Of a DNA stretch of 64,000 nt, positions 3,031 through 50,430 are shown one piece after another (positions within the stretch are counted from its first letter, which is position 1; each line of letters opens with the position of its first letter). A program made the position numbers and the translations under genes. The stretch is from Haliotis cracherodii (taxonomy: Eukaryota): NCBI RefSeq assembly GCF_022045235.1, contig NW_027266341.1, positions 2,604,001-2,668,000 of the forward strand. The letters are read 5' to 3'. The notes beneath the pieces are model-generated. The model was given only the letters and a program-made list of their open reading frames with translations. It had not been told where the DNA came from and ran no database searches.

Positions 3031-3361
3031 TTATGCAATCTTGCCCAATTCACTATATTCACTAATCATATCACGTGATGTGCTGTCAAGTGTTTCATAC
3101 GTCTGTGGTTCTGTTGGCTCGGATATATCTCGATCTGTCATTTCAGCAACTTCAGCAGCTGCCCCACCCTCCAGATCTGGCTTCTCTGTGGTAAGTGTGC
3201 AATATGTCTCTCCTGGTCCCTGGATTTCACGCGACATGACGCTGAGGCCATCGTATGTTCGGTCTTCAAGTTCAGTTTCGTCGTTGTTTCGTGATTGTTT
3301 TGTTTGAACCTTTGACAGATGACTTTTGAGATCATGTGAATGAGATTCCTGCAGTTATGAT
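3031..3361 (-). CDS. Gene 1 last exon: cytoplasmic tail with YDGL, YCTL, YETL and YSEL, preceded by an in-frame TAA
   Basis: Acceptor tattttcag|A TCA TAA CTG CAG GAA... is in the same frame as ORF 3031..3237. Homologous to the gene 2 tail. Confidence 0.75.
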
Positions 3362-6300: not shown

Positions 6301-8419
6301 TTGTCCACCCAGGAAGACATCCAGTGTCACATGACCCTGTATGCCGGTCACATGACGACGGAGCAGCAGCACATTTTCCACATGTCTCGTTACAGTTGAC
6401 GCCATAACGGTCCTTATCACACGCTAGAAATGAAAGGTGTGTTGATCAGAATCATTCGGAACATGAGGTAAATGGTTATCATTATACATTTATTATTAAG
6501 ACATAGGTATTCAAGTTTACATCATTTTTTTCATACAAGAAATATATTCATATTACAGCAATAATGTTGTTAGTTCCTTACCAGTAGAACAGTTTTGTCC
6601 TTGCCACCCTGGTCTACAGTCACCAGCACAGATCCCACTGAATCTGTCACAGGGCCTGTCAGAACAATGGCAGAAATGGTTGCAAAGTTCGCCAAAGGTT
6701 CCGTGACTGCAGACTAAAAACAGCATTGGCGTTGTTCATGTCTCTGCCTTAAACATTTGGTAGTTAAGAAATAAGAACTGTACGTTGACGTTTATTGTTG
6801 AAATTGCAGATGTTATTATGAATGTAAAGAGATCTGAAAGTCATAGATGTTTTCAATTTGATGAAACACATAAACCCTAGAATGCCGCTGACCATAATCA
6901 GGATGAATTATGCACAGTGAGCTGTGGAATATTGATCCAACTGACGACTCCTGGCATCAGGGCATCAAGAGCTTGAATACTAGTAATTCAAAGATCTTAT
7001 GCGTGTTACAAGTATTAGTCTATTTATGTAACATGGGTTCTTTCTACGAAGGAACAATGTCTATAGCAACACATCACAGATGGGCAAACGAAACTCAAAA
7101 TATCCTGTTGCATAACACTGCCTCCTGATTAAACAGTCATGGTGGAATGGCATATCTGATTCAAAGATAGATCAACAAAACAAACAAATGTTTATCAATA
7201 CCAAATATTTCCACCTCACACAGATTTAGTGTCTCTGTGCTGTGTGTGATGGTGAAGTATCTCCCTGTGCCGTCACACGTCACGTCGTATACGCTGTTGT
7301 CTGTTTCAGCTGTGTCAGAGGGGAAGGTGTAGCAGGTGACGCCGGGTGTGGAGCTGCTAGAGTTACTCAGGGAGAGGACGGCGGTTTGGAGTCTGTCAAT
7401 AGCTGAAATGGTGATCATTATAAGGCGACAAAAAATCATAAAACATATCTGATAAAAGTCGTTTGTGCGATTCCGACTATATCATAAGCATGTATGTAAG
7501 ACATAGTTGTCCCCTTTTAAGAAATTATGGTCTCAAATTATATATCCTGTGTATGATATGTTAATAAAAACTATGTGCCTTTCATATCTCATCAAAACTA
7601 GCAAAGTTTTTGTGATGATTTGAGTGATGGAGCATTTACATCAAACGAACACACACCAAGCATTTGTGAAAACTGTGATAGCATATTGTTGATACTATGT
7701 CTTGCATCCAGTTTACGTAGAATTCAGGAACGCCATAGCTTTGTGCGTAAATATAAATGGTCAATGCAAGAGAATAACCAGTTTAGATTACTGCTTAACA
7801 GATTCAATTTGGCGGAAAGGGCAAAATAACTGTATAAATAATGATTATATCAATGGAGCGCTGAAAATACGTGGTGACACTAAATGTTCAAAATGCATCG
7901 TACTCTGGTTCTTCCATTCCACAGAGGAGATTCTGAATCATCAATAAGAATATAGTAATTCTTTGAGGCAAATATTAAGGGAGACAGTTATTGTTTGACA
8001 AATGTGAATTCAAAGGGGAACTGGAACTGCAACCTGTAAATTTCGGGGTATTGTGTTCTTATTCCGTTTGACTTTAGTTATGAATAATGAAAATATGACA
8101 AGCGAGGGGACACAATATCCATGTAGGTGCTAATATTCAAATATACGCCCACTAACTAGGTTCCTATCAGAGTCTTCAGGATGGTGCAGAGTAATTCCCT
8201 GAAATGGAATAGTTCGTTAGCCTGTTTTAGGTAAGGTACTAACATATTAAAGGAATAACAAGCTGGTCGAATATTTCAGGTAATCCTTTTCCACAGGTAA
8301 TCCAGACATAATATTAAGACGGCGCCCGAAGTACAATGCATAAAGATGCCCTAAAAAGTCACTTTCTTGACTTTATTGATAAAGATTAGAGTTAAAATTA
8401 CCAACAAGGTTGTGTATAT

Positions 8420-8468
<49 letters not shown>

Positions 8469-11400
8469 CGTGCGTGTATATATTTTTTTCTGCTAAACAA
8501 ATATGACACCGTATACGCTAACTAAAGACACCATAACTAATAATATGTAGTAATTGTTGAAAATGATATTGACAAAAATACCAAATACGAAGTAGTCGCT
8601 TTATCATGCCATGAAGATGATCGAAATATTTGCAAACCAAACACCCACTCACCCAATTACCACATATGAAATCTACATTTGCTAAGATATCCTGATGCAG
8701 GTGTTATGAAATAGAGTATCTTCGTTGCATCTTGCATATATGGGTCTGGAGTTCTGTTCTGTAAATATGTTTACCTAAATATACATGTCAGTAAATGAAA
8801 CCTCTCTACAGTCCAAATATATCACATACATACATCCTGCCCGGTGGTTATTTTTGATCAGCATGAACTAACATGTTTTGTGACGCTTCCACCAATATCC
8901 CAAGAAATCAAATAACATTGTCCGAACTGATACATACAATACAATCGATTGTATATCCTGACGTCGTGTATCCTGTACGGCTGTCCCAGGTCCACGGTCC
9001 ACACACTCGGAGTCCGTTTAGCGTGGAAGCAGGAGAAGTGCAAATAATCCTGGTCCTGGTTCCCATCTACAACCTTGTCTGCAGACCACGAAGGTAAATA
9101 GAGTCCAGAAGGAGTTGTCGCTGATTTTCCTTTCGCAATGTTTTCTGTTTGGATATATATTTTCAAAGACATGTCACACAAAGACTTGACCTGACCAGAA
9201 TGGTTTATATTGTTCAGTAGGAGATGAATCTTTCTAGTGAGGCCCATGTTATGCATGATAAAGACAATGTTTATTCGGTTTGCCTGAGCTGATGTCTCGT
9301 TTTAATAATTTTGGACATATAACTATGATTAAAAGTGATCTTCATAGAAACGAATGTGACATGTCCCCATTTTGTGCGAGAAGCAGGATTTACGTATGCA
9401 AAGTTTCAACATTTAAATGTTTAAACGACCTAATATGAGGGAAAGTAAATGCTGAAACTTCGATGGAATTTGATCTTGATAGGTCCTGTAGGACAGCATG
9501 AAATATTCAGTTTCAAATTTTCTGGAATACGGAATTCTGTGATGACCCTCCGAACGTTATTGGATGGATTATAAAGATATATAACTACAGGTAACTTACT
9601 AAATGGTTCCGTAATGGGTAGGTGTGTCACAGTGAGTGAGTGAGTATGGTTTTACACCGATTATAGCAATGTTCAAGCAATATCACGACGGGGGACACCA
9701 GAAACGGTCTTCACAAATTGTACCCAATGCGGGATTCGACCCCGGGGCTTCGACGTGATGAGCGAACGCTTTAACCACAAGGCTACTCCGCCTCCCGGAT
9801 GTGTCACAATCTGATTGGATGCATCAATAGGATTCAAAGCCTGGGAATCTTCTCGACTTTCTATTGGTGCGAAATTTTAAATTGCGTTTGGCATTAATCA
9901 TAGAATTTCTTTGATTAAAAGTCAAACAAACGTCTTGGAGAGTGTATACAGCATTCTGTTAACCTTGAAGCTTCAGTTGTCATTCTCTGAATCTTAACTT
10001 CATCATAACGTCATGGCATACCAGGGTGACGACATGTATGTCTCACAGCTATTGGAGTACCAGTCGAAAGAGAACATTATGGAAATCAACGATAACTTTT
10101 ATATTTGCCGTGTTGATAAACATTATGTGCTTTCATATTTTAGGTGTCATTGAGGATCCAATGCACAGCAGTTGGAACATTTAAAACCTACTTTCATTAA
10201 AAAGTCTCAGGGAGCCATTATACTAACAAATGTAAATATATAACGTCAACTCCAGAGGCTAGCCTCGATCCTCCACCTGGCGCAAAAGGCAACACATCGG
10301 TGACAACTACACGAACGGATCGCTGAAAATTAGTGATGACACCAGGAGTTCAGGAAAAAGTGAAATCATGTCCTGCTCTACTCGTAGCACCTGCCACTCA
10401 AACAATTTGCATAAAATGTAAGTAAACTCACCAGAATCAAATATATTCTAGCTCATCTGAATCAAAACAGATTCTTTTCAATATTGGAAATGTCATTATC
10501 CATGTCTTGTGTTTATTGTGCATCACACGCAACGTTGATAATTCCACCTTATCGACTGAAAAGTAAATCTACCATATTAGTGTAATATGTCACCATAAGA
10601 GTACATGCAGTTATAAATGTCATGACGCAGAAATATGTATTGCGAAATTATGAAAGACAGTCAACTCTGAAATGAAATAGTCAGATATCAACAATTTAGC
10701 CAATTTTGGAGATTAGGTTGAATCAGTCATATTTCAATATGTATTATATTCATATTCATACTAACCGAAGAAGGCTGTTATTATATTCGTGTACGTGATA
10801 GTGAGTGAGCGAGTAATAATGATGTTGCGCCGCTTTAAGAAGTATTCATTCTCACAATTAGGGGGACCTCATAAATGGGTTTCAGACATTGCACTTACCC
10901 GGGCCTTCAACGTTACGGGCCAACATTGTACCAACAACAGGCAATCCGACTGCCGTCAATATATTTATGCCTAAACACAGCTAAAGTAATAAAGTTTGGG
11001 GATTAACGTCGCATGTAAGATTATTGCACTTATACAATAACGTGTATGCACGTGCGTGTGTGTCTGATTGTACTATTCCGGACAAATGCCGATTTTATAG
11101 TGCTGGCCCAATGAGATACAATGTCGGCAGTTTAACATACCTTAATTCAGACACAGTATACTAACTCCGAGCCGACCAGTTCTTGTTTTAGCCCCTTAAT
11201 GACCAGCACCAGACAGGGGGACAACAAGTACCATCTTTTAACGTCTTTTGGTATGACGAGGACGGGGATCCAACTCCGCACCTTTCGCTCTCCGGGCGGA
11301 GGCTCTACCATTAAATCACGGAGGCGGTACTAATGAAGCAGAATGTTTTAAAATAGGTATTGTAAGTATGTGGCTGGTCATAGAGAATAAGGGCACTTTC

Positions 11401-14400
11401 TGTTTTTGTTTCCAAATCAATTTCATTTTAAATCACACCTTTCTGGCAGTTAGATCCATTTCCTCCCATCCAACCAGACTCACAGCCACCTCCACAAACT
11501 CCTGTTGTCTGGTCACAGGAGTCTCCACAGTGACAGGAGTAGAAGCAGGAGTCTCCGAACTTTCCTGTTGGACAGGAGCCTGTAAAACATACTCAGTGGT
11601 GAAATACATCAAATATTGACAGCAGCAGATGCATACATTTGCAATGAAATTCACAAATATCTTCCAATCAGCACTTGAATAGAGAATTTAAAACTATCTG
11701 CATTACAACCATGCACACACTCGCAGGCAGGCACACATATTCTCTAAAAAAAGGAAACGCAAAGCCAGATTAGTATGAGGTACGAGGAACCGTACAAGGT
11801 ATTGAGCCACAATATTATGGAGAGAACACTTGGTGATTGTAGTCATCTCAGTTATCGGTACATAGAAAAAGTCCAAGGTTAAGGTCGGCTACCATCAATA
11901 ACTCATTTTAACTTAATTCAACGATTTTATAGCGATATTGAAATAGTCCGCCCATGGGCGAGTAAAAGGTTTGGCCAATGGGCAAGAATATTTTCCATTA
12001 CACAAAACTTATGTGTTTGTTTCGCAAATATATTTTAATGCATTCCTTCACGTATCATGACACAAAATTTAACTCATTTTAACTTAATTCAACGATTTTA
12101 TAGCGATATTGAAATATTTCGCCCATGGGAGAGAAAAAGGCTTGGCCAATTGACCTGCCCATGGGCGAAGTTTGGCCCATGGGCAAGAATATTTTCCTTT
12201 ACTCAAAACTCATGTTTTTGTTTCGCAAACATTTAACTTGTATTCCATCAAGTATCATACACAAAATTTAACTCATTTTAACTTAATTCAACGATTTTAT
12301 AGCGATATTGAAATAGTTCGCCCATGGGCGAGAAAAAGGTTTGGCACATGGGCGAGAATATTTTCCATTACACAAAACTTATGTGTTTGTTTCGCAAATA
12401 TATTTAAATGCATTTCTTCACATATCATGACACAAAATTTAACTCATTTTAACTTAATTCAACGATTTTAGAGCGATATTGAAATATTTCGCCCATGGGC
12501 GAGAAAAAGGCTTGGCCCATGGGCGAGCATATTTTCCTTTGCTCAACAGTTTTAGTTTCGCAAATACATTAAGGGATTATAAGCATGACACATGATTCAA
12601 CTCATTTTAATTTAATTTAACTAATTTTTGGCGTTATAATATTTCGCCCATGTTTTCGTCAGTCCCTTTAAAGAATTAACTAATTGTTTACAAAGTATAT
12701 TGTATCATGAGCAACACACTTTGTATTATATCATTACATTACTATTTTAAAAGGGCCTTTGGTTGGATGTTTCCTTTGCAGAAGTTTTACAAATTTCCCC
12801 TTTTTTACATATTGCAACGATCTTTAATGAACCCGGCCTTATCTCTCAAAACGTTTTGACAGTTTATCATACAAATTCACGCGCGTGTACACCAATTCAT
12901 TGGCGTTATTTTTCAACGAAAATTAAAGTTTAGTTTGTTTCTTTTTCACTTCCCATTTTATGTCTCGTAAATACATCACACTGGGAAATTAAGTGACAAT
13001 AGATATGCAATATACAGGTACACGTTCGCGTTTTTTAATGGGAAAAAAACCGATTCGTCTTTCATTGCATAACGTCTAGCTGAATATCTCACATTCTAAC
13101 GAAATAGTTTTATGACCACGTGCCTCGGCACAAGCATGGTGCTGGAAGACAAGTTATACATGTACATCCCATATAGTGACTGATTTTCGCTATTGATACT
13201 CTAGATTCATTCATAATACCACAACATTTAAGTACTCCTTGAAACTTTACAATCACTTCAATATATACAATAGATTAAACGAGAACAAATGATATATTGC
13301 AGATTATTAACTCATTGTCTCTTTTATCAGCTGCTACGTTTGTATCGTTTGCATTGTACAAAGAAATATTGTGTCTGTCCTTTTGCAGATTTAGCCCCAA
13401 AATGTGCTCATTCGAATTAGGAACGAAAATAATTGCTTATCATGAGTATATATGATACAGTTAAAAGTTACTTATACACTGTAGATGTATTCACTTTAAA
13501 GTCGTATTGGCGAGCGAGTTATATGATCCAGGTTAATTGGAACGAAGTCTAGAAAGGATTATAAAGTTTTGTATTTGGTAATGTGTAGGTTTGTTAAATA
13601 TGATTTTTTAAAAATTCCTTTTATTCAAAATGTAAAACAAATAATTATGCGTTGAAAAATAGAGCTGACTTGATGCGAGATGTGGCGTTAGCCACCTGAG
13701 ATTGTCTGGTGGACACGGTTTAACCTTACTGTGCCCTCACCCTGGTTGTTGTTGTCGTTGTTATAAGGGATTGGGAGCTACAGCTCATTGCATTTTTGGT
13801 TACAGTCTGTCTCACTAAAGTGGACATGTGCAGGTGAACTCTGTTCAATTAGTATATGAAATGCCCCAATATATGAACTCAAGACAATAATAACCTGAGA
13901 GTAAATCAACGTGCGTCTGCCTTTCCCCTCGTTCACCTGAAATTCAGTGACAATGTTGCTGAACAGTTGAATCTGATGGACGTATTGTGCATAACCTGTT
14001 TGACACTATTGGTTCCAGGACCACTAACACTGGGAAGAGTGGCACTCTGAGCTGAAAAAAGTTTGGTCCTAACCACCCCAACATCTACAAGTTTGTAAGC
14101 TTTTTGATATCTTTAAGAAGAAATTAACAGTCCCATGCTGAGACCTTTCTAAAAAATTCAGGCCGGTGGCAGGCTGCCAACAAAGAGAAGAAAATATCGC
14201 AACCTCGACACAAGTGTGCTCTGTCAAACGATGAACTTACGACCGGTGTCCCGGTATAAACTCTCCCCCGTACAAATTCTCCCCCCGGAAAGTTTATACC
14301 GGTACAGATTCTCCCCCGGAGAATCTGTTCTGAAATAAAATCACCCCCGGGCGGATATATTTCGCGCCCCCCTCAGTATAAAGTCTCCCCCCTGATTATT

Positions 14401-25700: not shown

Positions 25701-25920
25701 GATGTTTCTGTTGATGATGTCTGTGGTAAGGCTATTATTAATACATTTTCAGAATCCTATCTTTTCTTATAATTGATATCATGTGCAAAGTTGCGCCCCT
25801 AGGGCACGCCAGGAACCTATGATTGTGGGTTCGAATCCCGGTGCGACACGATTATGTTTCTAGGTTTGTCAGCACCATGCCCGTGCCCTTGGGTTTCACC
25901 GAAGTGGTAAACGTCTGAGA

Positions 25921-30100: not shown

Positions 30101-31482
30101 CCCTTGGACTCCTCACAACCACGTCTGCTTATGGACTTCAGTCGAGGCGCTCCCTCATACAATTGCAAAATTATATAGGTTACCTGTTTGTGCCTAAGTC
30201 ATGCTTTTACTTTTCACTCTATACTTTACTCGAGATGAACAGCTTAAGGAAACGCCCCACTTCCTGGTGTATTGCAGTGAATATATAGATTGGTTTACTT
30301 AAAAACGTTCAACAGATAGCGAAATCGTGACTTCCTTGATGTTTTTCATGGCTTCGTAACGGTAGAGGCAAATGTTTACTTTTTGGACCTTTTAAAGAGA
30401 AGGAACCGTGAGTTTGGATTCCGTTTATTGATGAAGCGCCAGTGATCGTATATAATTACAAAATAATTGCAAAGATGTATACTAATCAAAAAGCAATAAA
30501 TCAAATAAGTGTTTAAGTTATCTACGTTAAGTAATCCAACCTGTGAGTGATATATTTTAGAATTTGTGTAAATAATTCCAGACTGACTACAGTCGTCACA
30601 CGTTTTCTTATTGACATTGTTTATGCACATAAACATATACTCATATACAGAAAACAAAGCGTGACATTAAAGCAATAACAAACATGTGACTATCATAGTC
30701 AAACAATATTAATGACACTAAAGGCTTCTGGGGCATAGAGATAACAAGCGTGGCCTGAGGCTACGGATGCAATAACCCATTACACATACTACTACTCTGG
30801 GTTTACCTAGCTATAGGTTTACAACATGTGAAAGGTGGTATTTTTGATAAAATATGATTTGTGTCAGTACGACGTAGACTATTTTCCTGTCAGCATAGCA
30901 TGTGAATTTGATATGCCTGATGAAAACATGTAAATGTTTTTACTTTTTTGAAGATTATTTTCAAATATCATCAATATAATAATACATAATCGCAATGCAT
31001 CAAGTGAATCGTCTATTACAAATATTTACAAGTTAACAGATCATATAACTTTGTCCTGTCCATGTATTTCAGTTCACCGTCCACATACAAAGGTGGTGAC
31101 GCCATAATGACAAGGTCTTCATGCATGCAAAGCCAAAACTATAATTATAAGATAAACGCCACCTATAACTTATATTTAGCAAAATATAAATACATTTACG
31201 TTAGGTCTTAAGTATTAATATTATCAGTTCACATCAGGGGACATTGGGTTACAACATAGCTCTCATTGAACTTACACAATTCACATTGTAACTGTATCTG
31301 TGTAGTGTCTGTGCGTCAACAGACATCAGGGTACAGAAATACGTAAATAATTAATTTATTTATTACAATTTTAAACCCACAAACATAGAAATAAATCTTA
31401 GAGCTAAAGGGCACCTTTTGCGAATATACGTTCAAGTACCAATATATCATTTTATTTGAACAGTAAGTTTGTCAATAGAAAG

Positions 31483-31795
31483 TCACTTAACCTTCCCGAT
31501 CTCACTGTATTCACCATCAGTTCCCCGTGACGTGTTGTCAAGGGTTTCATAGGTCCCTGCTGCGATAGAGTCGGACACGTCACATGACGTCAGAACAGTG
31601 GCATCAGTTTTTGCATTTGTTTGGCCAGATTTAACGGTGCAGTAAGGCTCTCCTTTCATCTTGGCGTCATATGAGACGGCATTGAGACTGTCGTATGGCC
31701 TAGTTTCTGGGCCAACGTCATCACTGGCCTGCGGTGGTTCAGTTGGAACGAGTGATACAGTGGTTGGGCGCGATTCAGATGTCTTGTGTAGGCAT
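31483..31795 (-). CDS. Gene 2 cytoplasmic tail exon (YDSL, YCTV, YETL, YSEI)
   Basis: Acceptor cacattccag|A TGC CTA; lies within ORF 31483..31812. Confidence 0.85.
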
Positions 31796-34700
31796 CTGGA
31801 ATGTGAACACAATCGAAGCTTGGTGTAAAGTACATGAAAGACATAGACGCATTATCCAATATGATGTTGTTATTAGATATGATCCTATTTTTTGGACCCC
31901 AAAAAACACAATGCTTTTTGATTTTTTAAAATATATATCTTGGAACTATATATTGTGACCCATTGACCTGTTCCTTCTCCTCCAGATAACAGCACTGACG
32001 ATGGCACCTACTACAGCACCAGCCACGAATGCAAGAACCACTGCGACAGCCAATTGGCTCAAGTTATACCCGGCGGCTTGTACACACCTCGCATCTTCTG
32101 AATACATAAAGGACAAGATCACGCAATGATGTTTATACAAATATGTTTATACATTAAAAAATGTAAATTTAACAAACGATAGAGTATAAGCTGTGTCATC
32201 AAATACAAACGTGGTCCTGCTTTTGAAATAGTTTGTGACAATTCTCAACCTTGTCTGGGATTTGTGGCATTTCATGTTTTAGGGGGTTTATGAACCTCTC
32301 GCTTGCATAGATTTAAAACATAGATTAGTGTGTGAGTAATGCATGTGTACCAGTCGCGACAATTAAAACAGATATGACTTTTTGCATTTTGTTCAGGATA
32401 CAGCCATTGTGCTGATCAGTACTTCCTTATGGAGCTCCGTTATTTCATTTTATTTTGGTCTGACATGGACATGCATATGTTACTACAGATAGAGATGTTT
32501 CATTAACTGCCTTATCTTTTGCATTGAATCAATCTATGAAGGCAGTCTCGAAAAGTAAGAGCTTTACAAATTGACAACAATGTGTGTGTTTGTGTGTGTG
32601 TGTGAGTGAGTGCTATCCCACTGAGATACAATGTCGCTGTCGTTTGGTTTGACTTGGCCAGGAGATCGATCCAAAAGACCACGGAGGGTGTTCAATAGGT
32701 TTACAGATGGGAATGATGATTAAAACATCAACAACTCTACGGAGAAACGGCACCATCAGTTATAGCCGATGTCAGGAACACAAGCTTTAGTGTTTAACAC
32801 ACGCCTGGTATTGTTTCTGAAATGACTGGGGGCTAACACGCTTTGAATAACACACTTGTTGCAGATTGAGAATTCTCTTCTTTGTCCAAAAAGAAATTCA
32901 ACTTTGTATTGAGATAAAAGTTTATAGAAAAGGCTGATTACATTTTATAATTTTCCCCAGGGTTATGCTTGTCTTCTTAGGACTAACTATTGTCAACAAC
33001 ACATATTAAATAATAAGCAGCAACTGCAAGTCAAAGTGAAACTTACCTATGATTTCTAACTATGAACCATATTGCCAAAACAAATAATGTTTATATGACA
33101 ACAAAATGAAGTAACTGTTACAGGAAACATTCAATATTGTGATATGAGAAATCACGCAGATTCAGAGATCGATGCATTGGCCTCTTAACATTATACATGC
33201 ATAGTTCTGAAAACGAGGTGCAAAACAAAATAATGTGCAACAAAATAATGTTCTATCTTTCCAAATTAAAATGATGGTGATCCCTGTGCTTTTTACTTTG
33301 CCTCGAATTCACACCAAAGTCACTGGATACCTCGTAAACATATGAGTATTGATATTATTTTAGTTTTGTTGAATCATCATTTACGTTAGTGTACAAGAAA
33401 ACAATATAGTCTTAATTTGTCAAAGCAAATACATTTCTCACTGACGTATTTCCATCTATTGCAAACGTGCAGTGCACCGATGAGAATGGCTTTCAATTCC
33501 AACTGCTCTTCACAATTTGATTCCAGCGTTTAATGTTGCATTTCTTTGTTTTACAAATATCCGTTACCTATTAAACACATAATACCTTGCCATATTACCC
33601 TCAATCCACTGCCAACTCTACAGTCACTGCCTACCTGTTGCCATAACATAATTACCTGTACAGTCCGCTTGTGCCCACCCTGTATCACATCCTCTGTCAC
33701 AGTCCCCTGTTGAGGCACAGGAAGAGTTTCCCACACAGTGTCTGGAGGCACATGTCTTGTCACAGTTAGCTCCGTAATGATTTATATCACATGCTGTAAA
33801 ATTATCGAAGGAGCATTATGCCATCATATGCCGTGAACCTAAGATTGGAAACATGGCTGAATTTATGTCAATGTTTATCTTCATATGTTAACTCTGATCT
33901 TAGCCTTTTTTAACATGTACAAAATCTAGCCTCCCTAATTTGTTTTTTATGTCTGGAATACTATCATTACATAGTAAGCCTCTCATAAAGGAGAATCATT
34001 ACGTCCAACAGTTGCTTACAGTTGTGATACATATTTCAATGTTTCACTGTGTTCAATTTATAATGTAAACTACGGTTGTCACCTTCTCTGCAGTCTTCAC
34101 TCATCCACCCTGGCGCACACCCGGAAACACATGTCCCTCGTACGTGATCACATGGCGAGTCTCCTGCACACTTCCTGTCTGTGCAATAGTTTCCGCAGCT
34201 CTGTCCATAACTTCCAGTTGAGCATGCTGTGAAATCATAATTTCATAAGTATATTACCAAGCATCTATTGCTAATAAGTGTTATGTTACTGCTTCAAACA
34301 CGTACGGCTACCATAGCTCAGCATCACACCTGATTCATTATAAAGTATTCAGGCCAATTTTTAAGAAATAATTTACTATCTTTCCGAATGAAAACGATGT
34401 TGATCGGTGTTCTTTTTGCTGTTTCACTAATTCACTCCTTACCTTGTCAACATAATTTAGTTTTTCAGAATGATTTAAGTTAGTGTTTTAAGGAAACAAT
34501 ATATTCTTGATATGTCAATGTATCTACATTATAGCAAATAGTTACACACGTCCTCATTGGCGTAATTCCATTAATTTGAACAGTATAATAGTCGGATTTG
34601 TACCATCGACTCTGCTTCATGCAGATATTTCTATTGGATATGGAAAGGGTTTTGTCGCTGTATTTCCATTAATTAAGAACGTGTAGCGCATCGATTACAT

Positions 34701-37700
34701 CAGCTATCAATTCCAACTGCACTTCACACTTCGATTCCAACTCTTGATGTTGTATTTCGTTGTATTACAGCTATTCAATATCTTTTCAAACATATACTAC
34801 CTTGCTATATTACCGTCCAGCCACTGCCAACTCTCTACTCACAGCCAGCCTATTGACATAACATGGTTACCTGTACAGTCCGCTTGTGTCCACCCTGTTT
34901 CACATCCCACTGTCACAGTCCCCGGTTGAGCTGGAATACTATTATAAAATAGTAACCCTCTCATAGAGGAGAGTCACAACATTCAGCAATTGGGTACAAT
35001 TTCGATACATATTTCAAAGTTTTGCTGCGTTCAATATATAATATAAACTACGGTTGTCACCTTCTCTGCAGTCTTCACCCATCCACCCTGGCTCACACCC
35101 GGCAACACATGTCCCTCGTACATGATCACATGGCGAGTCTCCTGCACACTTCCTGTCAGTACAAGCGTTGCTGCATTTCTGTCCATAGCTTCCACTTGAG
35201 CATGCTGTGGAGGAATAACATGAGTATATTACAAAGCGTCTATTGCTAAGAAGTGTTATGTTTATTACTTATCTTAATTATCGCATCTTTAATGTTATCT
35301 AACTCCTCTATAAACATAAATGTAGTTTGTGCCATCGCCATGGATCGGTTAAAACAGGATAGCATCAGCGGTAATGTGTTCTAAATGGTTAGTTTTTAAA
35401 TGTATGATCAAACCGTTTCCCATTGCCCTGAAAGGAAAACCGTAAGCAGGCAACATCACATCATACAATGGTTAAATTATATTTAACAGTGTTTGAACAT
35501 AGCTGTCATGAACATAATACAAAAGGTATTATTTCAGTTTTTCCTGGATGAATCCCTATAGTACTTGTTCTGATTATAAGTCGGTCTCCAAGCAAGAATG
35601 CATCATTCAGAATGCATCTCAGATGTTCTTCATTTTTTTGTTCTTTAAGCGACGTTTCGTGACCTCGATGTTTTTTGTTTGCGATACGTTTTATGTTAAA
35701 ACTCGGGCTTGCATTTGTCTTTAACGACGAAACGTGTCTCAAGAGCCTGTAAACTGATTTTGTCCAAATGTTGGTCGTGTATGTAGACTAAGAATTACAT
35801 ATTCAAAGGTCTCATGAAATAATTAATTTAATATGACATAACTCCATATGACATAACTTCGAACGAAATATGTCCATTACTTAAACTCCATAGCTACTTC
35901 TGGCGTGATTAAGGCAACTCCAGTTTCGGTCGGTTTCGTTATTCTTTCTCAATTTGAAACAGAGATATTAGTACTTCTGGTGCATTACAACTAAAACCCA
36001 AGTCCTATGTCTCTGGTTCACAGTGTAATAAAGGTCTTACTACTTCCGATTTTGTAGAACTCCCTTCCAGTTTCTGAAAACACTACACTAAAACTTTAAC
36101 TATTCAAATTTGTCTAAGAACGTAATTAACTCTTGTTGTAATTAGAGGACACTATGACACCAGATATCGCTGTTTACAGAACTGGACTGACCTTATTTTT
36201 GAAATATGTGAGGCGAGAAAGGGTGTGTGGCGTGGTCTTGGAGACTAGATATTTAATAAAAAATAGATATTTTACATATAAAAGTAACAATATGAGCCTT
36301 ATTGTTCTTAAAGCCAACTGCGTGGTATGTTGCACATAATATACACCCCTAGTATGTCTTATTTAGACTCGAATATTTACAGGTAGAACATAGTTACGTG
36401 CGTCATTAAACATGTGCAAGATCAAGATTGTTTGCAGTGGAGTACGACAGATTTAATGGATGCTCTTTCAATAGTTCCAACCTTGTTTGTCATACATGGG
36501 TCTCACTTGTATGATCACACAATTTTAAGATTAATATATTGAGTTGTTGGGTGTTTGTGGAATAATTCATTGTCATGTTGCCATAACGTAGCTGTAGTGT
36601 TGCTGACTAATATACATTTTACTAACATATACCAATTTATCAATCACGTTTTGTTAATAGCAACGACGTGAAAATAGACCAGGACTCCTAATCCCGAGGA
36701 ATCAATGTTCTGGGCAATGGAGAAGTGGTCTACAGTCTCCAGGACAGACACCACCACCGACTGCATCTCCTCACCTGTATCACACCTGTCTCCCTGCCAC
36801 CCTGATCTACAGTCTCCAGGACACACACCACTAACTGAATCTCCTCACCTGTATCACACCTGTCTCCCTGCCACCCTGGTCTACAGTCTCCAGGACACAC
36901 ACCACTGACTGAATCTCCTCACCTGTATCACACCTGTCTCCCTGCCACCCTGGTCTACAGTCTCCAGGACACACATCACTGACTGAATCTCCTCACCTGT
37001 ATCACGCCTGTCTCCCTGCCACCCTGGTCTACAGTCTCCAGGACACACATCACTGACTGAATCTCCTCACCTGTATCACGCCTGTCTCCCTGCCATCCTG
37101 GTCTACAGTCTCCAGGACACACACCACTGACTGAATCTCCTCACCTGTATCACACCTGTCTCCCTGCCACCCTGGTCTACAGTCTCCAGGACACACACCA
37201 CTGACTGGGTCACACGTTGCTTGGAAGCAATGGCAGGACTGATTGCAGCTATCGCCGAAGACACCTGGGCTACAAACTTGAAATAGGACGATAGTGAATA
37301 TTATTGCTTCCAATGTCTGTATTAACAATTTTATCGGTTAGCTTAACAGTACCAAATATGATATATTATCCAACTTAAGAAAGAAATCAATAAAGATGTT
37401 TGTTGGGTCTTTACTATTTTGTTTTACAGCTTGCTTAATTTAGATGTAGCTGGGTGTGTTGGAGGGTGTTACTGTACATTAAATTTCTCTATATATAAAG
37501 AATGTAGGTCATCCGCCTATGGTCACTAATTAGTATGTTTCAATACGAAAACGTACTTGTTTTATGTGGCTATATTATATTGTCCGCTATGACGTCAAGA
37601 CACGAGGGAGTTGTCAAATATACAAAGAGAAAACGGCACAACTGCGCTATGTTTAACTGTAAGCCATTGTAAATCCGCATGCGTCATGTGCGTGGTGAAA

Positions 37701-40700
37701 ATTTGCTTTGGATCACGACGATGCATTCTATTTTATTTTTGATCCTGTGTACCCAAACAGTTCCCATACAGCTATCGATTTTGATTTAGATTATCATCTT
37801 AAATGTCCTGAGGACATAAGTTGGTAATGATAAAGAAGAGTGTCCAGTTGAAATCAGATACGTTGAGGACAGAAAGTGAGGGTTTCTCAACAAACAGCTC
37901 CCCACTCCCCAGCCGACCAACCAATGTTCACCCAAAGCCAAACAGAACATGACCCGTCTCCACCCAAGAATAGCAAATGGTCGGCCCCAGGAAACGGGTA
38001 AAACAAATTGTTTTGTCCACACTTGTGCATACATAATAAAAATATAATGTGACGACTTTTCTTCAGGTAAACATTTGTTTTAAATTTAAGAAATGAAGTG
38101 GCTTTTTTATTGAACCTACTTATATAAATTCTCACGATTCTCCAGAGGAAATATGTACGTGCTACAGTGTGTTAATTCACAAAGCATCTTTTGGGGAGAA
38201 TATGCGTTACACCACACGATGAATATCATTTCTGTGTTCAAAGAAACAGCAGATGATCAAAGTTTTAAAAAGTGTATGTCATTTTAGAAAATATGGAAAA
38301 ATGTACTATTGAAGCAGAGAAAATACAAATATTCAATTCACGATTGAAACAGTAAACCACTTCATGAAATGAATGTGTTGTGTACTGATTCACCCGCACA
38401 CCAAAGTAAGTAAGAAATATGTACAATGGTGTTGATGTTGACAGTTGGTTTTTCCTTGATGCAGGGATTGCATCAAGCATACACGAGTCATGTAAGTTAA
38501 ATAATCAGAATCAATCTGCGCCATTTGTTTTTATATTACCGTTGATACTAAGTAGAAAGGAAGAGAAGTACCGTTACAAATAAAACTATGAGACGTATAA
38601 CCTAGAGAATGCAAATGACAATTTTTAAAATTTGTCACAGGGTTATCCTACGTACTTCCCTTTCATTGGCCCTATTTTGAGTGGTGACACTTAGGCAAGC
38701 GAAAAGCAGAAGTTACCGACGTAAATCGGAGTAGCCATTTTTTGTTTGAAATTAACGTGTACATATGCTATCAACAATTATCCGTACCATAAATTTCCAC
38801 CTCACACAGATTTAGCCGTATGCTGTGTGTGATGGTGAAGTATCTCCCTGTGCCGTCACACGTCACGTCGTACACGCTGTTGTTTGTTTTGACTGTGTCA
38901 TTGGGGAAGGTGTAGCAGGTGACGCCGGGTGTGAAGCTGCTGGAGTTACTCAGGGAGAGGACAGCAGTTCTAATTAATTGAATATCTAAAACAGGCAATG
39001 AAAGAAATGATATGCTGACTGACGGTGACATTGTGCTCTTGAACAATGACAAATAGCTAGCAAATGACACTTTGTGTGATCCAGTTCACCTGTCATCTTA
39101 TTGCTGAAACATGTGTGAACGTCAAATAAGACCATGTGACCACATTCAGTTTAAATGTGTAGGAAACATTAATTTGTAAGTCGTTTTTGATCAGCATGTG
39201 TGGCAGAGTGATATTTTGTACATAAAAGTTAGGTTTTAATTCTATTTTAGCCATAGCTTTATACACATTCTATTTCAGATTTGGATTAAGTAAATAGTTT
39301 ATTTACTATGCCTTACTTTTGTCATATAATTGTATTTCAGCTTAAACATTAATACCATAGCTTATCTGTTCATTCAGTCTATTATTTATCAAGCAATTAC
39401 TAACCATACAACTGCATGCTTTTCACCCACAGCACTTAGTATCCCACCCAACGTTTAGACTACTCTATTGTTCTCTGTGGTCACTCACAGCTGACCACAG
39501 GTACATGTATACCTTTGTACTCTTGTGATCTGGGGCAGTTGCCAGATTACACATGAAGCATATACATCAGTCATTATGTGTATAGTCCTGGATGGATCTC
39601 GTGTTTAGAATTATATTCATGGATCCAATGGATGTGTTAATTTCATGGATTTTAAGGTTTGTTGTGGTATATTTCTTGTGTGATGCTTTTTTATGTATTT
39701 GTGTATTCTAATTTTTAAAGTTAGAGCTAGTTTATTGCTAGTCAGGTTATGTATTGAATTCACAGTTCAGTGTATTATGGTTATGATAATTTTATATGAT
39801 AACGTATTATAAAGCAGTTTCTTTAATTGATAAATAGCTAATTTAGCCTGGGCTATTATCATCGTACTTGAACATGAACTAAGTAAAACTAAACCCTAAA
39901 TAAACTATACCTCATATCACATTAAGGTAATTGTGCTAATTATGTATAAGAAAGTATGCATATGTGTGAAAGTGCATTATTTAAGTTATTTGATAAATCT
40001 CTGTTTTAAATACCTATTTTACTTTTGTGTTGTGTATAGTGATAGTGTAAATAGTATCTGCATTACTTTATACTTTGTCAATGCAGATGTAACTGGCATT
40101 ATTTTAGAAGCCTTGGTGTCATGGCATAGGTTTCACCAATCTGGTAAGTATTGTTTATGTGTTATTCATGAATGTATAAATGTATGTATCTATATATATG
40201 CTGACGTTGTATATCTTTGTAATTATCACGTAGTCATGTACTTGTCTAATGTTATGACAGTAGACAGGGTTTATGTTTAGTTTACATTGATTATAGCATC
40301 ATAAGCATATATATTACTGTATCATTGTGCAGGTTACTTACTACATGAGTAACATAGGTTTCTCGCTATTTTAAGTTCATATAATTGAATGTCCATTAGA
40401 TGTAAGGCCCTTATCTATATCATAACAATGTCAATGTTCTATATCTTTTGTGCAGTATGTCTTAATATGTATACATTGTTTCAGGCCGTATTTTTCGCCT
40501 CTCACATTTGTCTTCTGAGAGAATAAAAAAAATCAGCTCATTCCCTGTAGCCGTTTGCGGTGTGAAACCGTCTCGACAAATAAGTGCTACTATACATGTA
40601 CTAACATGTTTTGGGACGCCTCATCATAATATCCAAATAAATCAAATAACGCTGTCTAAACTGATACATACATCCTGCCCTGTTGTATATCCTGACGTCA

Positions 40701-43700
40701 TGTATCCTGTACTGCTGGCCAAGGTCCACTGTCCACACAGGTTTAGGGTCCTGATACGCAGAGTGAAAACAGGAGTTGTGGAGCACATCCTGGTCCCGGT
40801 TCCCATCTACAACTTTGTCTGCAGTCCAGCCGTGCCTTGCGTAATCAGTTGGGGACGAGGTTGCTGTCTGGTTGTAGGCAATGTTCCCTTACACGAAAAT
40901 AAGTACGAAGATAAATTACTTTTAAAATTGAAATTTATTATATGTGAAAAGTAAGGGTTTTAACTTCCAAGGAATATGATCTTGGTGGATCCAACAGATC
41001 GTATTTTCAAAGATATGTCATACAAGTACCAGGCCTTCACCAGAACTGGTTGTATTGTCCGGAAGGTGCCTTTTTCTATTGTAGAAAAACTGCTCTGCAT
41101 AAAAAGCAATGTTTACCTATGTCTTATACAAGTTTACATAATTTTGGCATATATTTATTTGAGAGGGCTAACTTCATAGAAAAGAATATTTCCATGAGAA
41201 AGAGAAAACTACGGGAAATCAGCAATTACTTTTTGTATTTACTATGTCCATAAACATGATGTATTTTTCGATTGGTATTGAGTATTGATGCACAGCATAT
41301 TCAACATTGAAGCCCCATCGTCATTTGATAACCTAATCAGGGGGACATCAAAATAACAGATATAAAACAAACCAGGACAAAATTCAATCTAGCTTATCGA
41401 AAATGGCATTGTGATCACTTTCAAATCGTACCCTTATAGGTACCACATACATGTATGCGATGTCGGCAACATGCTGTAATTGTTATTACCCCACTCAGAC
41501 ATAGTATAATGTCTCCGAAACGACTAGTGAATGTTTTTGCCGCTTGATACCGAACGTCAGACAGGTGTTACAACAAGTAGAAGTCTCGTGGTATGACGAG
41601 GACGGTGATCGAAATCCTGACATAACGCTCTCCTGGCGGATGCTGTACCAAAAGACAACAGAGGCGGTCCTTGAAAATATGTAAACTGCTTGGTTCCTGA
41701 ACATGATTGCCTCACCAGTGTCATGTGACGTAAACCACATTTAGACGATCTTGTTGATGAAGCCAGTGAAGTGGCGCTGGAGAGGCTTGTTCGAAAATAG
41801 TCGGAAAGATGAAATAGTAAAGATGCATAGTTGGTCTTAAATAATGCAAGATACGAAAATATACGGAAGTTACGTTTGTAAAAGGGCTATCCAAGTTTTG
41901 ACTAAACTTAGTATCTTATAAATGGTATTTCCATGCTCAATATACGAATCATGTGCAAGAATGTTATGCAGAGTGTCTGGTTGATTATGTTTGGATCTCT
42001 GTATTCTCTATTGATTTTGTGTGAGGCAATATATCGTCCGGAAGACTAAGTTTGGTTTTAAAAGTATGTGAGATAGCAATAGCGGATACTCGGTACTGCT
42101 CTACTTTTATGTGGAGTGCAAGAATCATGTTTGTTTGCCATTTGCGACGGTACTTCTAGACACCGGTGCCGTAAAAATACCACAATGTATGGGTGGTATC
42201 CAGAGCCATGTTCCACAAAGCGATCGTAGCGCTACGACAGTCGTAAGTCTATGTTAAAGTTTGGGAGTTACGATCACCTCACCACTACAATCGCTTTGTG
42301 GAACTGGGCCCATTATCTGTAGATTGGATTGTTCATCATTCGGGACTGATTCAGAAGGGGTGATGGTCTTATAACGCCAGCAGTTCGTTAGGTATCGTCT
42401 TTCAAATCTAACCTTGTGACAGTAACACCCACCTTTCTGACAGGTTTGCCCATTCCCACCAAACCATCCAGGATCACATGCACCGTTACAGACTCCAGTT
42501 GTCTGGTTACAGGGCTGAGTACAGTGACAGGAGTAGCTACAGGTGTCTCCGAACTTTCCTATCGGGCAGCTGGTACCTGTAAAATGTAGAACAAAGGTTA
42601 ATGTTCATGCAATGCTCTCCAAGCCCCATTACCCATAAACACATGTTCAAATGTAAGCATGGCTCAGTCACAAACTTCTTACAGCCAGATAGGATGGTCG
42701 GGTGGTTAAAGCGTTCGCTCGTTACACCGAAGACCCGGGTTCGATTCCCGACAATTGATTTACGTATGTTTCACACAACTGAAGAGATTGAAAGTGATCA
42801 CATTATTAATTAATCTTTCAGATTTACCTGGGTCCAAGATAGAGCTGACATCTTTAGATATAATTTGACAACAGATGAAGTATCTTATTTACTGGAAAGG
42901 GCAGTAAGTACAGCAGTACATACAGCATTCGTTAGCAGAAAGAAATATGGTCACGTTTCTTAGCAGTAAAATTTGATAGTTAATGTGTTGTATGTATCAG
43001 AATGTAAAGGTTTGTGCGCGAAATAACGGTATTGTGTCTGACACATTTGAAAGCGAAATTGGCGTTAAGCATGGATACATTTTAAGTCCGTTTTTGTTCA
43101 CCTTCTTTAACAATGAATTTGCTCAACAAATTCAGCAGAACTGTTCTGATGGCATCCAACTTCACCCGGAAACTATAGAGTTATTTCTTCTTTTGTTTGC
43201 CGATGATATAATAATTTATTTATTGTCATGGAAGTTGCATGCTCACACAGCTGCAGTACAAGCTAAGAAGATCCTAATTGGAATTCTTCAACATATGAAA
43301 GTTCTTGGAAGTATATCCTATAATACATTCTTTAAGATTTTCGATATAAAAATAAGCCCAATTTTGTTATATATAGCAGAGGTTTGGGGATTAGAAATGA
43401 CTGATGTTATGGAAAAGGTACATTTATATGCATGCAAAAGATTGGTGTGAAACTTAGAACGTCTAATCTAATGGTTTATGGAGAATGTGGACAATACCCA
43501 TTAATTATATTTGCAAAGTTAAAGACGATAAAATACTAGATTAAATAAGTTAAAATGGCTCAACAAGATATCGAAAGAAATGTTATAGCATGTTATAACA
43601 GAGTTGAAGTTGTGAGAGAAGTTGGGAATTGGGCATGTCGTCACAATGTTGTCGAGGTGTCTATGAGTAATACATGTATATGCGTTGCAGTAAGCTAAGC

Positions 43701-50363: not shown

Positions 50364-50430
50364 CAATTATAACCTGTATCCAGAAAGCCGATGTGACCAC
50401 GGTGACAGTCAGTATCCACACACCCGACAT
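50364..50430 (-). CDS. Leader exon A (distal; duplicate of the gene 1 leader)
   Basis: MSGVWILTVTVVTSAFWIQVII G|gtgagt; 67 nt. Confidence 0.65.

What the first reader, a model, noticed from the sequence alone, without database searches (positions are those of the whole stretch)
7202..40887. Lectin paralogs differ almost only in five loops matching the fucolectin CDR1-5 positions
The framework is near-identical, even at many silent sites (7205-7380 vs 38791-38960). Differences and indels cluster in five places: TPSGLYLPS/SSPTDYARHG, QDYLHF/QDVLHN, AKRTPS/SAYQDPKP, LYSIDRL/AGYIQLI and HSTETL/HSIRL. In eel agglutinin five such loops surround the sugar pocket. The canonical H-x26-R-x-D-x4-R motif is altered. 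His and the first Arg are kept (spacing 25 and 27) and the Asp is lost in both. The second Arg survives in gene 1 (DRL) but not gene 2 (QLI). This suggests diversifying selection on ligand specificity with framework homogenisation.
Basis: partly seen in the sequence, partly recalled or inferred. Interest (0 to 1): 0.8.

Follow-up and report, generated by a model that had tools for sequence, protein, structure and literature searches.

The report
Diversifying lectin heads of abalone receptors
Two neighbouring abalone genes for membrane receptors carry sugar-binding F-type lectin heads whose binding-site loops change fast under positive selection while one half of the scaffold has been copied between genes, a pattern already known from eel lectins and oyster sperm bindin.

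Summary
Both genes (minus strand) encode an F-type lectin domain (FTLD) in two phase-1 exons, and every quoted peptide and spacing checks out. The two heads differ at 41 of 137 aligned residues. Of these, 26 fall in the 35 columns that align to eel agglutinin loops (p 2e-10), so "almost only" is overstated. A sixth loop (SDTAETDN/NDTVKTNN) and the N-terminal strand also differ.

Silent-site identity holds only for exon B (dS 0.19). Exon A (1.37) and the flanking EGF exons (0.63, 1.27) are old, and the introns do not align. Across 20 paralogs the exon A and exon B trees conflict (AU p 0.0006-0.016). Gene 1's intron also keeps a relic of an older exon end, so sequence has been exchanged between paralogs.

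Codon site models favour positive selection (M1a/M2a LRT 61.5, M7/M8 79.7, ω about 3 at 12% of sites). All seven sites with P>0.95 lie in CDR1-4, and four align with eel ligand-contact residues.

The heads belong to SP-EGF-FTLD-EGFn-TM receptors of a family with at least 86 exon-A matches.

Oyster bindin and eel fucolectins show the same diversification, so this is a new member of a known kind. Sugar binding and 3D distances to the pocket were not tested.

The parts
8938..9144 (-). Gene 1 FTLD exon A (strand b2 to Arg79-equivalent; CDR1 9089-9115, CDR2 9035-9052, CDR3 9005-9022, first half of CDR4 8938-8944)
   Evidence: Reading of sequence, translation, Pfam PF22633/PF00754 above cut-off
7202..7402 (-). 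Gene 1 FTLD exon B (second half of CDR4 7392-7402 with the Arg86-equivalent, b8-b9 loop 7296-7319, CDR5 7230-7247)
   Evidence: 89% nt identity to gene 2 exon B
40672..40887 (-). Gene 2 FTLD exon A (CDR1 40829-40858, CDR2 40775-40792, CDR3 40739-40762, first half of CDR4 40672-40678)
   Evidence: PDB phmmer hits 3cqo, 4gwi, 1k12
38788..38985 (-). Gene 2 FTLD exon B (second half of CDR4 38975-38985 with Leu at the Arg86 position, b8-b9 loop 38879-38902, CDR5 38816-38830)
   Evidence: RNA-like contigs join 38788 to 37276 and 38981/38985 to 40672
7192..7386 (-). Tract of near-identity with 38778-38969 (gene conversion or exon exchange); stops short of the CDR4 codons
   Evidence: BLASTN 89.2% over 195 nt while introns do not align. 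dS 0.19 vs 0.63-1.37 in the other exons, Fisher p 1e-5
8738..8845 (-). Relic inside gene 1's FTLD intron of an older exon-A end (ACCGGGCAGGAT), its GT donor (8833-8832) and its intron start, displaced by a ~103-nt insert (8846-8948) of gene-2 type
   Evidence: BLASTN of paralog L032 exon end plus intron start against gene 1: 100/116 nt, and 30/30 nt upstream of the insert. Intron-start alignment
11440..11583 (-). Gene 1 N-terminal EGF-like exon, upstream of the FTLD
   Evidence: tblastn with P0030, P0055, P0001
6583..6717 (-). Gene 1 first EGF-like exon after the FTLD; further EGF exons lie down to about 5320 and tail-like coding at 3049-3315
   Evidence: ORF, Pfam EGF_laminin weak hit, tblastn
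42434..42589 (-). Gene 2 N-terminal EGF-like exon (signal-peptide exon at 50362-50430)
   Evidence: tblastn with P0001, P0030
37146..37277 (-). Gene 2 first EGF-like exon after the FTLD; further EGF exons lie down to 33657 and the tail at 31501-31848
   Evidence: tblastn. Splice joint 37276/38788 in RNA-like contigs

Best explanation
The two 'lectins' are the N-terminal heads of two type I membrane receptors. The architecture is signal peptide, EGF-like domain, F-type lectin domain, several EGF-like domains, transmembrane helix and cytoplasmic tail. They belong to a large, tandemly expanded abalone gene family.

Each head is an F-type jelly-roll. Its ligand pocket is built from His and the first Arg (exon A) and a second Arg (exon B). 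This second Arg sits at Arg+6, as in the C-terminal domain of striped-bass FBP32.

Shown here: the loops at the pocket end of the barrel (CDR1-4, the b8-b9 loop and CDR5) accumulate amino-acid replacements faster than silent changes. The strands, the Ca-site motif VVDGN and the four cysteines are held by purifying selection.

The domain's single intron lies inside CDR4, so each exon encodes half a pocket. Exchange between paralogs (gene conversion, or recombination in or near the intron) has re-assorted and partly homogenised these halves. Exon B of genes 1 and 2 is young, while exon A and the neighbouring EGF exons are old.

Inferred, not shown: the loops set glycan specificity, and the family is a repertoire of recognition receptors. 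Gene 2's subgroup (Leu at the second Arg) probably binds something other than fucose in the canonical way.
For: Domain identity:
- Pfam PF22633/PF00754 on exon A.
- PDB sequence hits to FBP32 3cqo, lectinolysin 4gwi and AAA 1k12.
- An AlphaFold model of the 85-86% identical H. rufescens protein P0001 has pLDDT 81-93 in the domain. Its top Foldseek hits are all F-type lectins (3cqo, 2j22, 4gwi, 2j1r, 1k12; TM 0.77-0.82).

Architecture and family size:
- Full-length relatives P0055, P0143, P0097 and P0030, and their tblastn footprints in the window.
- At least 35 exon-B and at least 86 exon-A matches in the genome.

Loop mapping: His52 aligns with the H of CFH and Arg79 with the R of YNR. CDR1-4 align residue by residue with AAA.

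Selection:
- M1a/M2a LRT 61.5 (p 4e-14) and M7/M8 79.7.
- A 12-paralog core gives 67.6 and 81.3. The same core without gap columns gives 38.3.
- 7 of 7 sites with P>0.95 are in the CDR mask (Fisher p 6e-5).
- Four of them align with AAA Glu26, His27, Tyr46 and Asp81 (p 7e-4).

Exchange between paralogs:
- dS between genes 1 and 2 is 0.19 in exon B, against 0.63, 1.37 and 1.27 in the N-terminal EGF exon, exon A and the first downstream EGF exon (Fisher p 1e-5).
- Introns are unalignable.
- The exon A and exon B trees conflict. L032 groups with gene 1's group in A at 95/97 but with L037 in B at 100/99. AU tests give p 0.0006, 0.016 and 0.005.
- Gene 1's intron contains a relic exon end.

Splicing: RNA-like contigs of related organisms carry the predicted joints. 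Database proteins P0015 and P0055 are identical to paralogs L045 and L047 across the predicted junction.
Against: - Taken as a whole, the CDR partition has pairwise dN/dS around 1 (0.56-3.4). That alone would fit relaxed constraint.
- The site models are my own implementation, with branch lengths fixed from M0 and NEB posteriors. Recombination within exons and alignment error in indel-rich loops can inflate such tests.
- No coordinates were available, so 'rings the pocket' rests on sequence alignment to AAA and on strand alternation in the model.
- The canonical fucose motif is degenerate: there is no Asp81 and no Cys82-Cys83, and the second Arg is missing in gene 2. Sugar binding is therefore unproven.
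- Expression was seen only as contigs of runs guessed to be RNA, from related organisms.
Confidence: 0.7

Rival explanations
1. Relaxed constraint only. The loops are simply free to drift, and no adaptive diversification is involved.
For: Partition-level pairwise dN/dS of the CDR mask centres on about 1. Loops tolerate indels in all F-type lectins (PMC5712786).
Against: M2a and M8 fit far better than M1a and M7, which already allow ω=1 or a beta distribution up to 1 (LRT 38-81). The selected sites are few and specific, and they coincide with AAA contact residues.
Confidence: 0.15
2. The positive-selection signal is an artefact of gene conversion, mosaicism and loop misalignment among paralogs.
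For: Exchange between paralogs is demonstrated here, and recombination is known to inflate site-model LRTs (my own knowledge of the literature). CDR1 and CDR3 hold indels.
Against: Separate trees were used for each exon. Removing every gap column and its neighbours leaves LRT 38.3 (p 5e-9), with sites in CDR1, CDR2, CDR3, CDR4 and the b8-b9 loop.
Confidence: 0.1
3. The heads are no longer lectins. They are F-type folds co-opted for protein or lipid binding, or for a structural role, and the loop variation serves that other ligand.
For: The acidic residue at Arg+2 and the vicinal cysteines are absent in both genes. Gene 2's subgroup has Leu at the second Arg, and L040/L042 lack His and/or Arg. 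Fold relatives such as factor V C2 bind lipid, and Drosophila CG9095 (PMC5712786) lacks two of the three basic-triad residues.
Against: 19/20 paralogs keep His, 18/20 keep the first Arg and 15/20 keep the second Arg at +6, the spacing found in the FBP32 C-domain. The review of its structure describes that domain as recognising L-fucose (PMC5712786). The Ca motif and both disulfide pairs are kept.
Confidence: 0.2
4. The similarity of exon B reflects a synonymous-site constraint (for example splicing enhancers or codon bias), not exchange between genes.
For: GC3 of exon B is high (0.52-0.71).
Against: Exon B dS reaches 1.2-1.6 between gene 1 and paralogs L035, L036, L040 and L042, higher than their exon A dS, so there is no general constraint. 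GC3 does not differ between the homogenised group and the rest. The exon trees conflict.
Confidence: 0.05

Closest known systems
Oyster (Crassostrea gigas) sperm bindin F-lectin repeats (Moy et al. 2008, as reviewed in PMC5712786 section 12)
   Same: An FTLD split by one intron in mid-domain. Positive selection at a handful of sites round the fucose pocket. Recombination in that intron yields new half-domain combinations. Some copies lack the His-Arg-Arg triad.
   Different: Bindin is a secreted acrosomal protein with 1-5 tandem FTLDs from few genes, and its diversity is mostly allelic or by splicing. Here there is one FTLD per gene, at the tip of an EGF-stalk membrane receptor, and the diversity lies among at least dozens of paralogs. 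The tissue and the role (immunity or gametes) are unknown.
Eel fucolectins: Anguilla anguilla agglutinin (PDB 1K12) and A. japonica eFL-1 to eFL-7
   Same: Same fold (TM 0.77, rmsd 2.2 Å for the proxy model). Isoforms vary in the loops round the pocket, CDR1 most of all (PMC5712786).
   Different: The eel isoforms strictly keep His52 and the CDR4 sequence with Asp81, Cys82-Cys83 and Arg86. Here CDR4 is itself hypervariable, one residue shorter, split by the intron, and lacks Asp and the cysteines. Eel lectins are secreted single domains.
Striped bass FBP32 C-terminal FTLD (PDB 3CQO)
   Same: Best sequence and fold match. Its CDR4 has no vicinal disulfide, has the second Arg at Arg+6 (R-D-S-F-E-K-R) and has an aromatic residue in place of the cysteines. 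Gene 1 has R-L-Y-S-I-D-R.
   Different: FBP32 keeps an acidic residue next to the first Arg and is a secreted tandem lectin.
Haliotis rufescens 'fucolectin-7-like' / 'fucolectin-like' predicted proteins (P0001, P0002)
   Same: 85-86% identical to gene 2's exons. Same SP-EGF-FTLD order and the same Leu at the second Arg. P0001 ends ...EVEIYGTDNC, which is exactly the read-through of gene 2's exon B donor.
   Different: They are annotated as short secreted proteins. In this window exon B is also spliced to an EGF exon, and relatives are long receptors.

Membership tests
F-type lectin domain (FTLD) | F-type jelly-roll fold | tested here: met
Tested on a proxy. The AlphaFold model of P0001 (85-86% identical to gene 2's exons) has all top Foldseek PDB hits among F-type lectins, including 1k12 at TM 0.77.
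F-type lectin domain (FTLD) | Fucose motif H-x24(26)-R-x-D-x4-R/K | tested here: not met
   Gene 1 reads H-x25-R-L-Y-S-I-D-R, with no acidic residue at +2 and the second Arg at +6. Gene 2 reads H-x27-R-A-G-Y-I-Q-L, with no acidic residue and Leu at the second Arg. Gene 1 keeps the basic triad in the FBP32 C-domain spacing. Gene 2 keeps two of the three.
F-type lectin domain (FTLD) | Cation-binding motif h2DGx | tested here: met
   VVDGN in both genes, and [VA]VDG[ND] in all 20 paralogs.
F-type lectin domain (FTLD) | Disulfide pairs Cys50-Cys146 and Cys108-Cys124 | tested here: met
   Cysteines are present at the aligned positions (SCFH, LCEVE, VTCY, VTCDG) in all paralogs. The bonds themselves were not shown.
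F-type lectin domain (FTLD) | Vicinal Cys82-Cys83 stacking on fucose | tested here: not met
   Absent in all 20 paralogs; Tyr, Ser, Phe or His occupy these positions. It is also absent in one domain of tandem fish lectins (PMC5712786).
F-type lectin domain (FTLD) | Binding of L-fucose or fucosylated glycans | not testable with these tools
   Needs recombinant protein and glycan arrays.
Bindin-type FTLD diversification (oyster) | Positive selection at sites round the pocket | tested here: met
   Site models. The sites lie in CDR1-5 and the b8-b9 loop. Position relative to the pocket was judged by alignment, not by coordinates.
Bindin-type FTLD diversification (oyster) | Recombination at the mid-domain intron re-assorting half domains | tested here: met
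   Conflicting exon trees with AU tests, discordant dS and a relic exon end in the intron.
Bindin-type FTLD diversification (oyster) | Sperm acrosomal expression and tandem FTLD repeats varied by splicing | not tested
   Each gene here has a single FTLD. The tissue of the RNA-like runs is unknown.

The most novel reading that the evidence does not exclude
The abalone FTLD-EGF receptor family would be a germline-encoded, combinatorial recognition repertoire. The intron sits inside CDR4 so that each exon carries half a binding pocket. Patchy exchange at that boundary (as in the relic at 8738-8845) both re-assorts the halves among dozens of genes and creates new CDR4 sequences. Selection keeps the loops different while the scaffold is homogenised. 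This would be a membrane-receptor counterpart of oyster bindin, working in immunity or self/non-self recognition.
Probability: 0.3. Interest if true: 0.65.

Novelty: new member of a known kind. Interest (0 to 1): 0.45.

Why it matters
It adds a gastropod membrane-receptor family to the short list of F-type lectins with measurable adaptive change at the binding loops, alongside eel serum lectins and oyster bindin. It also shows the same genetic trick as in oyster: a mid-domain intron that lets half pockets be exchanged. For mollusc immunology it points to a large, testable candidate family of diversified glycan receptors in an animal that disease has hit hard. For lectin engineering it gives a natural catalogue of tolerated and selected loop variants on one scaffold.

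Tried and rejected
- Exon B alone against PDB sequences gave only chance hits to C1q (E 0.2-0.8), so the alignment of the second half came from the database protein P0001.
- Papers that might give residue ranges of CDR1-5 or the bindin sites are not held (PMC2935320, PMC3682648, PMC2538870). No held paper contains both 'F-type lectin' and 'CDR5'.
- A GC-biased-conversion signature was sought: GC3 does not separate the homogenised exon B group from the rest.
- A general synonymous constraint on exon B was rejected, because exon B dS exceeds 1 against other paralogs.
- More copies inside the window were sought: tblastn finds only the two.
- 3D distances to the fucose site could not be computed, because the tools return no coordinates.
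- The spliced (joined) protein models of genes 1 and 2 were neither searched nor folded, following the operators' rule. Exons were searched one by one, counts were summed across exons without joining, and database proteins served as proxies.
Full report
WHAT IS THERE

The window is a 64-kb piece of a 1.18-Gb animal genome (G000 contig C78). It contains no N. Between 7202 and 40887 the minus strand carries two copies of a two-exon module. Gene 1 has exon A at 9144..8938 and exon B at 7402..7202. Gene 2 has exon A at 40887..40672 and exon B at 38985..38788.

Both modules start and end in phase 1, with AG and GT at the borders. The internal intron (1535 and 1686 nt) splits a codon, giving Ser in gene 1 and Tyr in gene 2. 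tblastn finds no further copy in the window.

I did not search or fold the joined model. Where a whole domain was needed I used database proteins.

IDENTITY OF THE DOMAIN

Exon A passes the Pfam cut-offs of PF22633 and PF00754. Its best PDB sequence matches are:
- striped-bass FBP32 (3cqo)
- lectinolysin (4gwi, 3le0)
- eel agglutinin AAA (1k12)
- SpX fucolectin modules

The word search found two Haliotis rufescens 'fucolectin-like' proteins. P0001 is 86% and 85% identical to gene 2's two exons. An AlphaFold model of P0001 has pLDDT 81-93 across the domain. Its ten best Foldseek PDB matches are all F-type lectins, with 1k12 at TM 0.77 and rmsd 2.2 Å over 148 columns. So the heads are F-type lectin domains (FTLDs).

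GENE CONTEXT

The exhaustive search with exon A returned full-length relatives with the following order: signal peptide, EGF-like domain, FTLD, several EGF-like repeats, a transmembrane helix and a tail. Examples are P0055, P0097 and P0143. P0030 carries a tyrosine-phosphatase-like cytoplasmic part.

P0015 and P0055 are identical to paralogs L045 and L047 of this genome across the predicted exon junction. That supports my splice reading.

tblastn places the matching exons of both genes in the window:
- Gene 1: N-terminal EGF exon 11583-11440, EGF exons 6717-5320, tail-like coding 3315-3049.
- Gene 2: signal peptide 50430-50362, N-terminal EGF exon 42589-42434, EGF exons 37277-33657, tail 31848-31501.

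Contigs of runs guessed to be RNA, from related organisms, carry two joints. One is 37276/38788, joining exon B to the next EGF exon with GT..AG on the minus strand. The other joins 38981-38985 to 40672. The modules are therefore spliced as predicted and expressed, at least in relatives.

The genome holds at least 35 exon-B and at least 86 exon-A matches, in clusters on C78, C5, C8, C34 and elsewhere. I did not verify the species name.

CHECKING THE OBSERVATION

All the quoted peptides are present. Genes 1 and 2 differ in 41 of 137 aligned columns. Of these, 26 fall in a 35-column mask that I took from the alignment to AAA and FBP32 (hypergeometric p 1.7e-10). Every indel lies in CDR1, CDR3 or CDR5.

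Fifteen differences (37%) lie outside the mask:
- four in the first strand (KGKS/YNQT)
- four in the loop SDTAETDN/NDTVKTNN
- seven scattered

So 'almost only' is too strong.

The motif statements are right. The His-to-Arg spacing is x25 and x27. There is no acidic residue at Arg+2. The position of the second Arg is Arg in gene 1 and Leu in gene 2.

Across 20 paralogs:
- His is kept in 19.
- The first Arg is kept in 18.
- The second Arg, at +6, is kept in 15.
- Four paralogs (gene 2, L039, L044, L045) have Leu at the second Arg.

The +6 spacing and the lack of the vicinal cysteines match the C-terminal domain of FBP32.

MAPPING TO THE EEL LOOPS

HMMER aligns exon A to AAA so that the H of CFH is His52 and the R of YNR is Arg79. 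The rest follows:
- TPSGLYLPS/SSPTDYARHG covers AAA 19-29, with Glu26 and His27 (CDR1).
- QDYLHF/QDVLHN covers AAA 43-48, with Phe45 and Tyr46 (CDR2).
- AKRTPS/SAYQDPKP covers AAA 53-59 (CDR3).
- R-LYSIDR/R-AGYIQL covers AAA 79-86 (CDR4).

These residues are the ones named as loop and contact residues in the review PMC5712786.

The fifth place (THSTET/THSIR) is the loop before the last strand. It aligns with LPGTNKV of FBP32. The secondary structure of the model alternates consistently with three anchors taken from the review: the C-terminus at the bottom, the Cys124 turn on the lower side, and CDR4 on top. This alternation puts both the fifth place and the b8-b9 loop (SDTAETDN) at the pocket end of the barrel. 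That is an inference. No coordinates were available, and no held paper gives the residues of 'CDR5'.

SELECTION

I extracted 20 paralogous domains, aligned each exon separately and built a tree per exon.

Pairwise Nei-Gojobori values give dN/dS of 0.56-3.4 (about 1 on average) for the CDR mask, and 0.12-0.93 for the rest.

I then fitted codon site models of my own writing. They use GY94 with F3x4 frequencies, separate trees per exon, branch lengths fixed from M0 and parameters shared across exons. The likelihood-ratio tests were:

| Data set | M1a vs M2a | M7 vs M8 |
|---|---|---|
| 19 paralogs (L049, identical to L048, left out) | 61.5 (p 4e-14) | 79.7 |
| 12-paralog core | 67.6 | 81.3 |
| Core without gap columns and their neighbours | 38.3 (p 5e-9) | not run |

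In the full set, ω is about 3.3 at 12% of sites.

In the full set, the sites with posterior above 0.95 are exon A columns 18 and 19 (CDR1), 36 (CDR2), 44 and 49 (CDR3) and 78 (CDR4), plus exon B column 2 (CDR4). All seven lie in the mask (Fisher p 6e-5). Four align with AAA Glu26, His27, Tyr46 and Asp81 (p 7e-4).

In the core set, exon B columns 28, 31 and 34 (b8-b9 loop) and 64 (CDR5) also pass 0.95.

The caveats are listed under evidence against.

HOMOGENISATION

Silent divergence between genes 1 and 2 differs sharply by exon:

| Exon | dS between genes 1 and 2 |
|---|---|
| N-terminal EGF exon | 0.63 |
| FTLD exon A | 1.37 (0.82 for framework codons) |
| FTLD exon B | 0.19 |
| First EGF exon after the FTLD | 1.27 |

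Exon B differs from the other three with Fisher p 1e-5. BLASTN aligns only exons and short flanks between the genes. Exon B stands out at 89% identity, against 68-78% for the same three exons. The tract (7192-7386) stops just short of the CDR4 codons.

This is not a general constraint on exon B. Its dS against L035, L036, L040 and L042 is 1.2-1.6, and GC3 shows no special signature.

The exon trees conflict. L032 groups with gene 1's clade in exon A (support 95/97) but with L037 in exon B (100/99). AU tests of each exon's clades on the other exon's data give p 0.0006, 0.016 and 0.005.

Gene 1's intron also preserves a footprint of exchange. Positions 8845-8738 match L032's exon-A end (ACCGGGCAGGAT), its donor and its intron start (100/116 nt). 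A 103-nt insert of gene-2 type (8948-8846) now supplies gene 1's CDR4 codons, its donor and its intron start.

So the framework has indeed been homogenised, but only in exon B. Exon A's framework is kept by purifying selection.

COMPARISON WITH WHAT IS KNOWN

The review PMC5712786 reports two precedents. Eel fucolectin isoforms vary in CDR1 and CDR2. [quoted passage not shown]

The present case shows the same mechanism in a different setting. There is a single FTLD on an EGF-stalk membrane receptor, the diversity is spread over dozens of paralogs in a gastropod, and CDR4 is itself hypervariable and split by the intron. I rate it a new member of a known kind, of moderate interest.

NOT SHOWN

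Four things remain untested: sugar binding, the 3D distance of the selected sites to the pocket, the tissue and role of the receptors, and whether the exon B similarity arose by gene conversion or by reciprocal exchange.

Noticed in passing
window 8738-8948 (gene 1 FTLD intron start): A relic of an older exon-A end plus donor (8845-8832) and an L032-type intron start lie about 100 nt inside the intron. They were displaced by a 103-nt insert of gene-2 type that now encodes the first half of CDR4. L033 shows the same BLASTN pattern; L034, whose first 110 intron nt are near-identical to L033's, was not tested. This is a physical footprint of patchy exchange at the CDR4/intron boundary.
   Followed up: partly
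window 38771-38787 and 7161-7201: Reading through the donor of exon B gives short tails: GTDNC* in gene 2 and GIDKHLFVLLIYL* in gene 1. The H. rufescens protein P0001 ends with exactly ...YGTDNC, and P0015, P0002 and P0074 have similar ends. A secreted SP-EGF-FTLD isoform by intron retention may therefore exist beside the receptor isoform.
   Followed up: partly
window 8862-8937 vs 40595-40671: The first ~75 nt of the FTLD intron are conserved between genes 1 and 2 and in L033, L034, L039 and L043-45 (type I). L032, L037 and L038 share another start (type II). The frame stays open through this stretch in both genes (CMYQFGQCYLI... / CMYQFRQRYLI...).
   Followed up: partly
window 38894-38902 (gene 2 NDT) vs 7311-7319 (gene 1 SDT); 40865-40873 (gene 2 NQT): N-glycosylation sequons switch on and off among paralogs at the positively selected column 28 of exon B and at residue 5 of exon A. 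Part of the 'selection' may therefore concern glycan shielding rather than ligand contact.
   Followed up: no
window 36734-37137: A tandem array of ~74-bp units, each encoding a half-EGF-like piece (DSVSGVCPGDCRPGWQGDRCDT), lies just downstream of gene 2's first EGF exon. It was seen as repeated tblastn and BLASTN hits.
   Followed up: no
window 8420-8470: A (CA)n microsatellite lies inside gene 1's FTLD intron. The oyster bindin literature notes microsatellites flanking FTLD exons.
   Followed up: no
G000:C78:2579160-2581411 and 2595897-2598148 (L033, L034); L031; L041; L023: L033 and L034 are near-identical copies 16.7 kb apart, just upstream of the window (a recent segmental duplication). 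L031 is a truncated copy of L032. In L041 no in-frame exon-A start could be found (possibly frame-broken), and L023 has two stop codons.
   Followed up: no
P0030 (database relative, 1093 aa): One family member joins the same SP-EGF-FTLD-EGFn ectodomain to a cytoplasmic part that reads like protein-tyrosine-phosphatase domains (by eye, e.g. VHCSAGIGRTG; no domain scan was run), i.e. a lectin-headed receptor phosphatase.
   Followed up: no
window 22672-22740: A signal-peptide-like exon (MAGVWILTVIVVTSSCWIQVIIG) lies 11 kb upstream of gene 1's N-terminal EGF exon. It may be gene 1's first exon.
   Followed up: no
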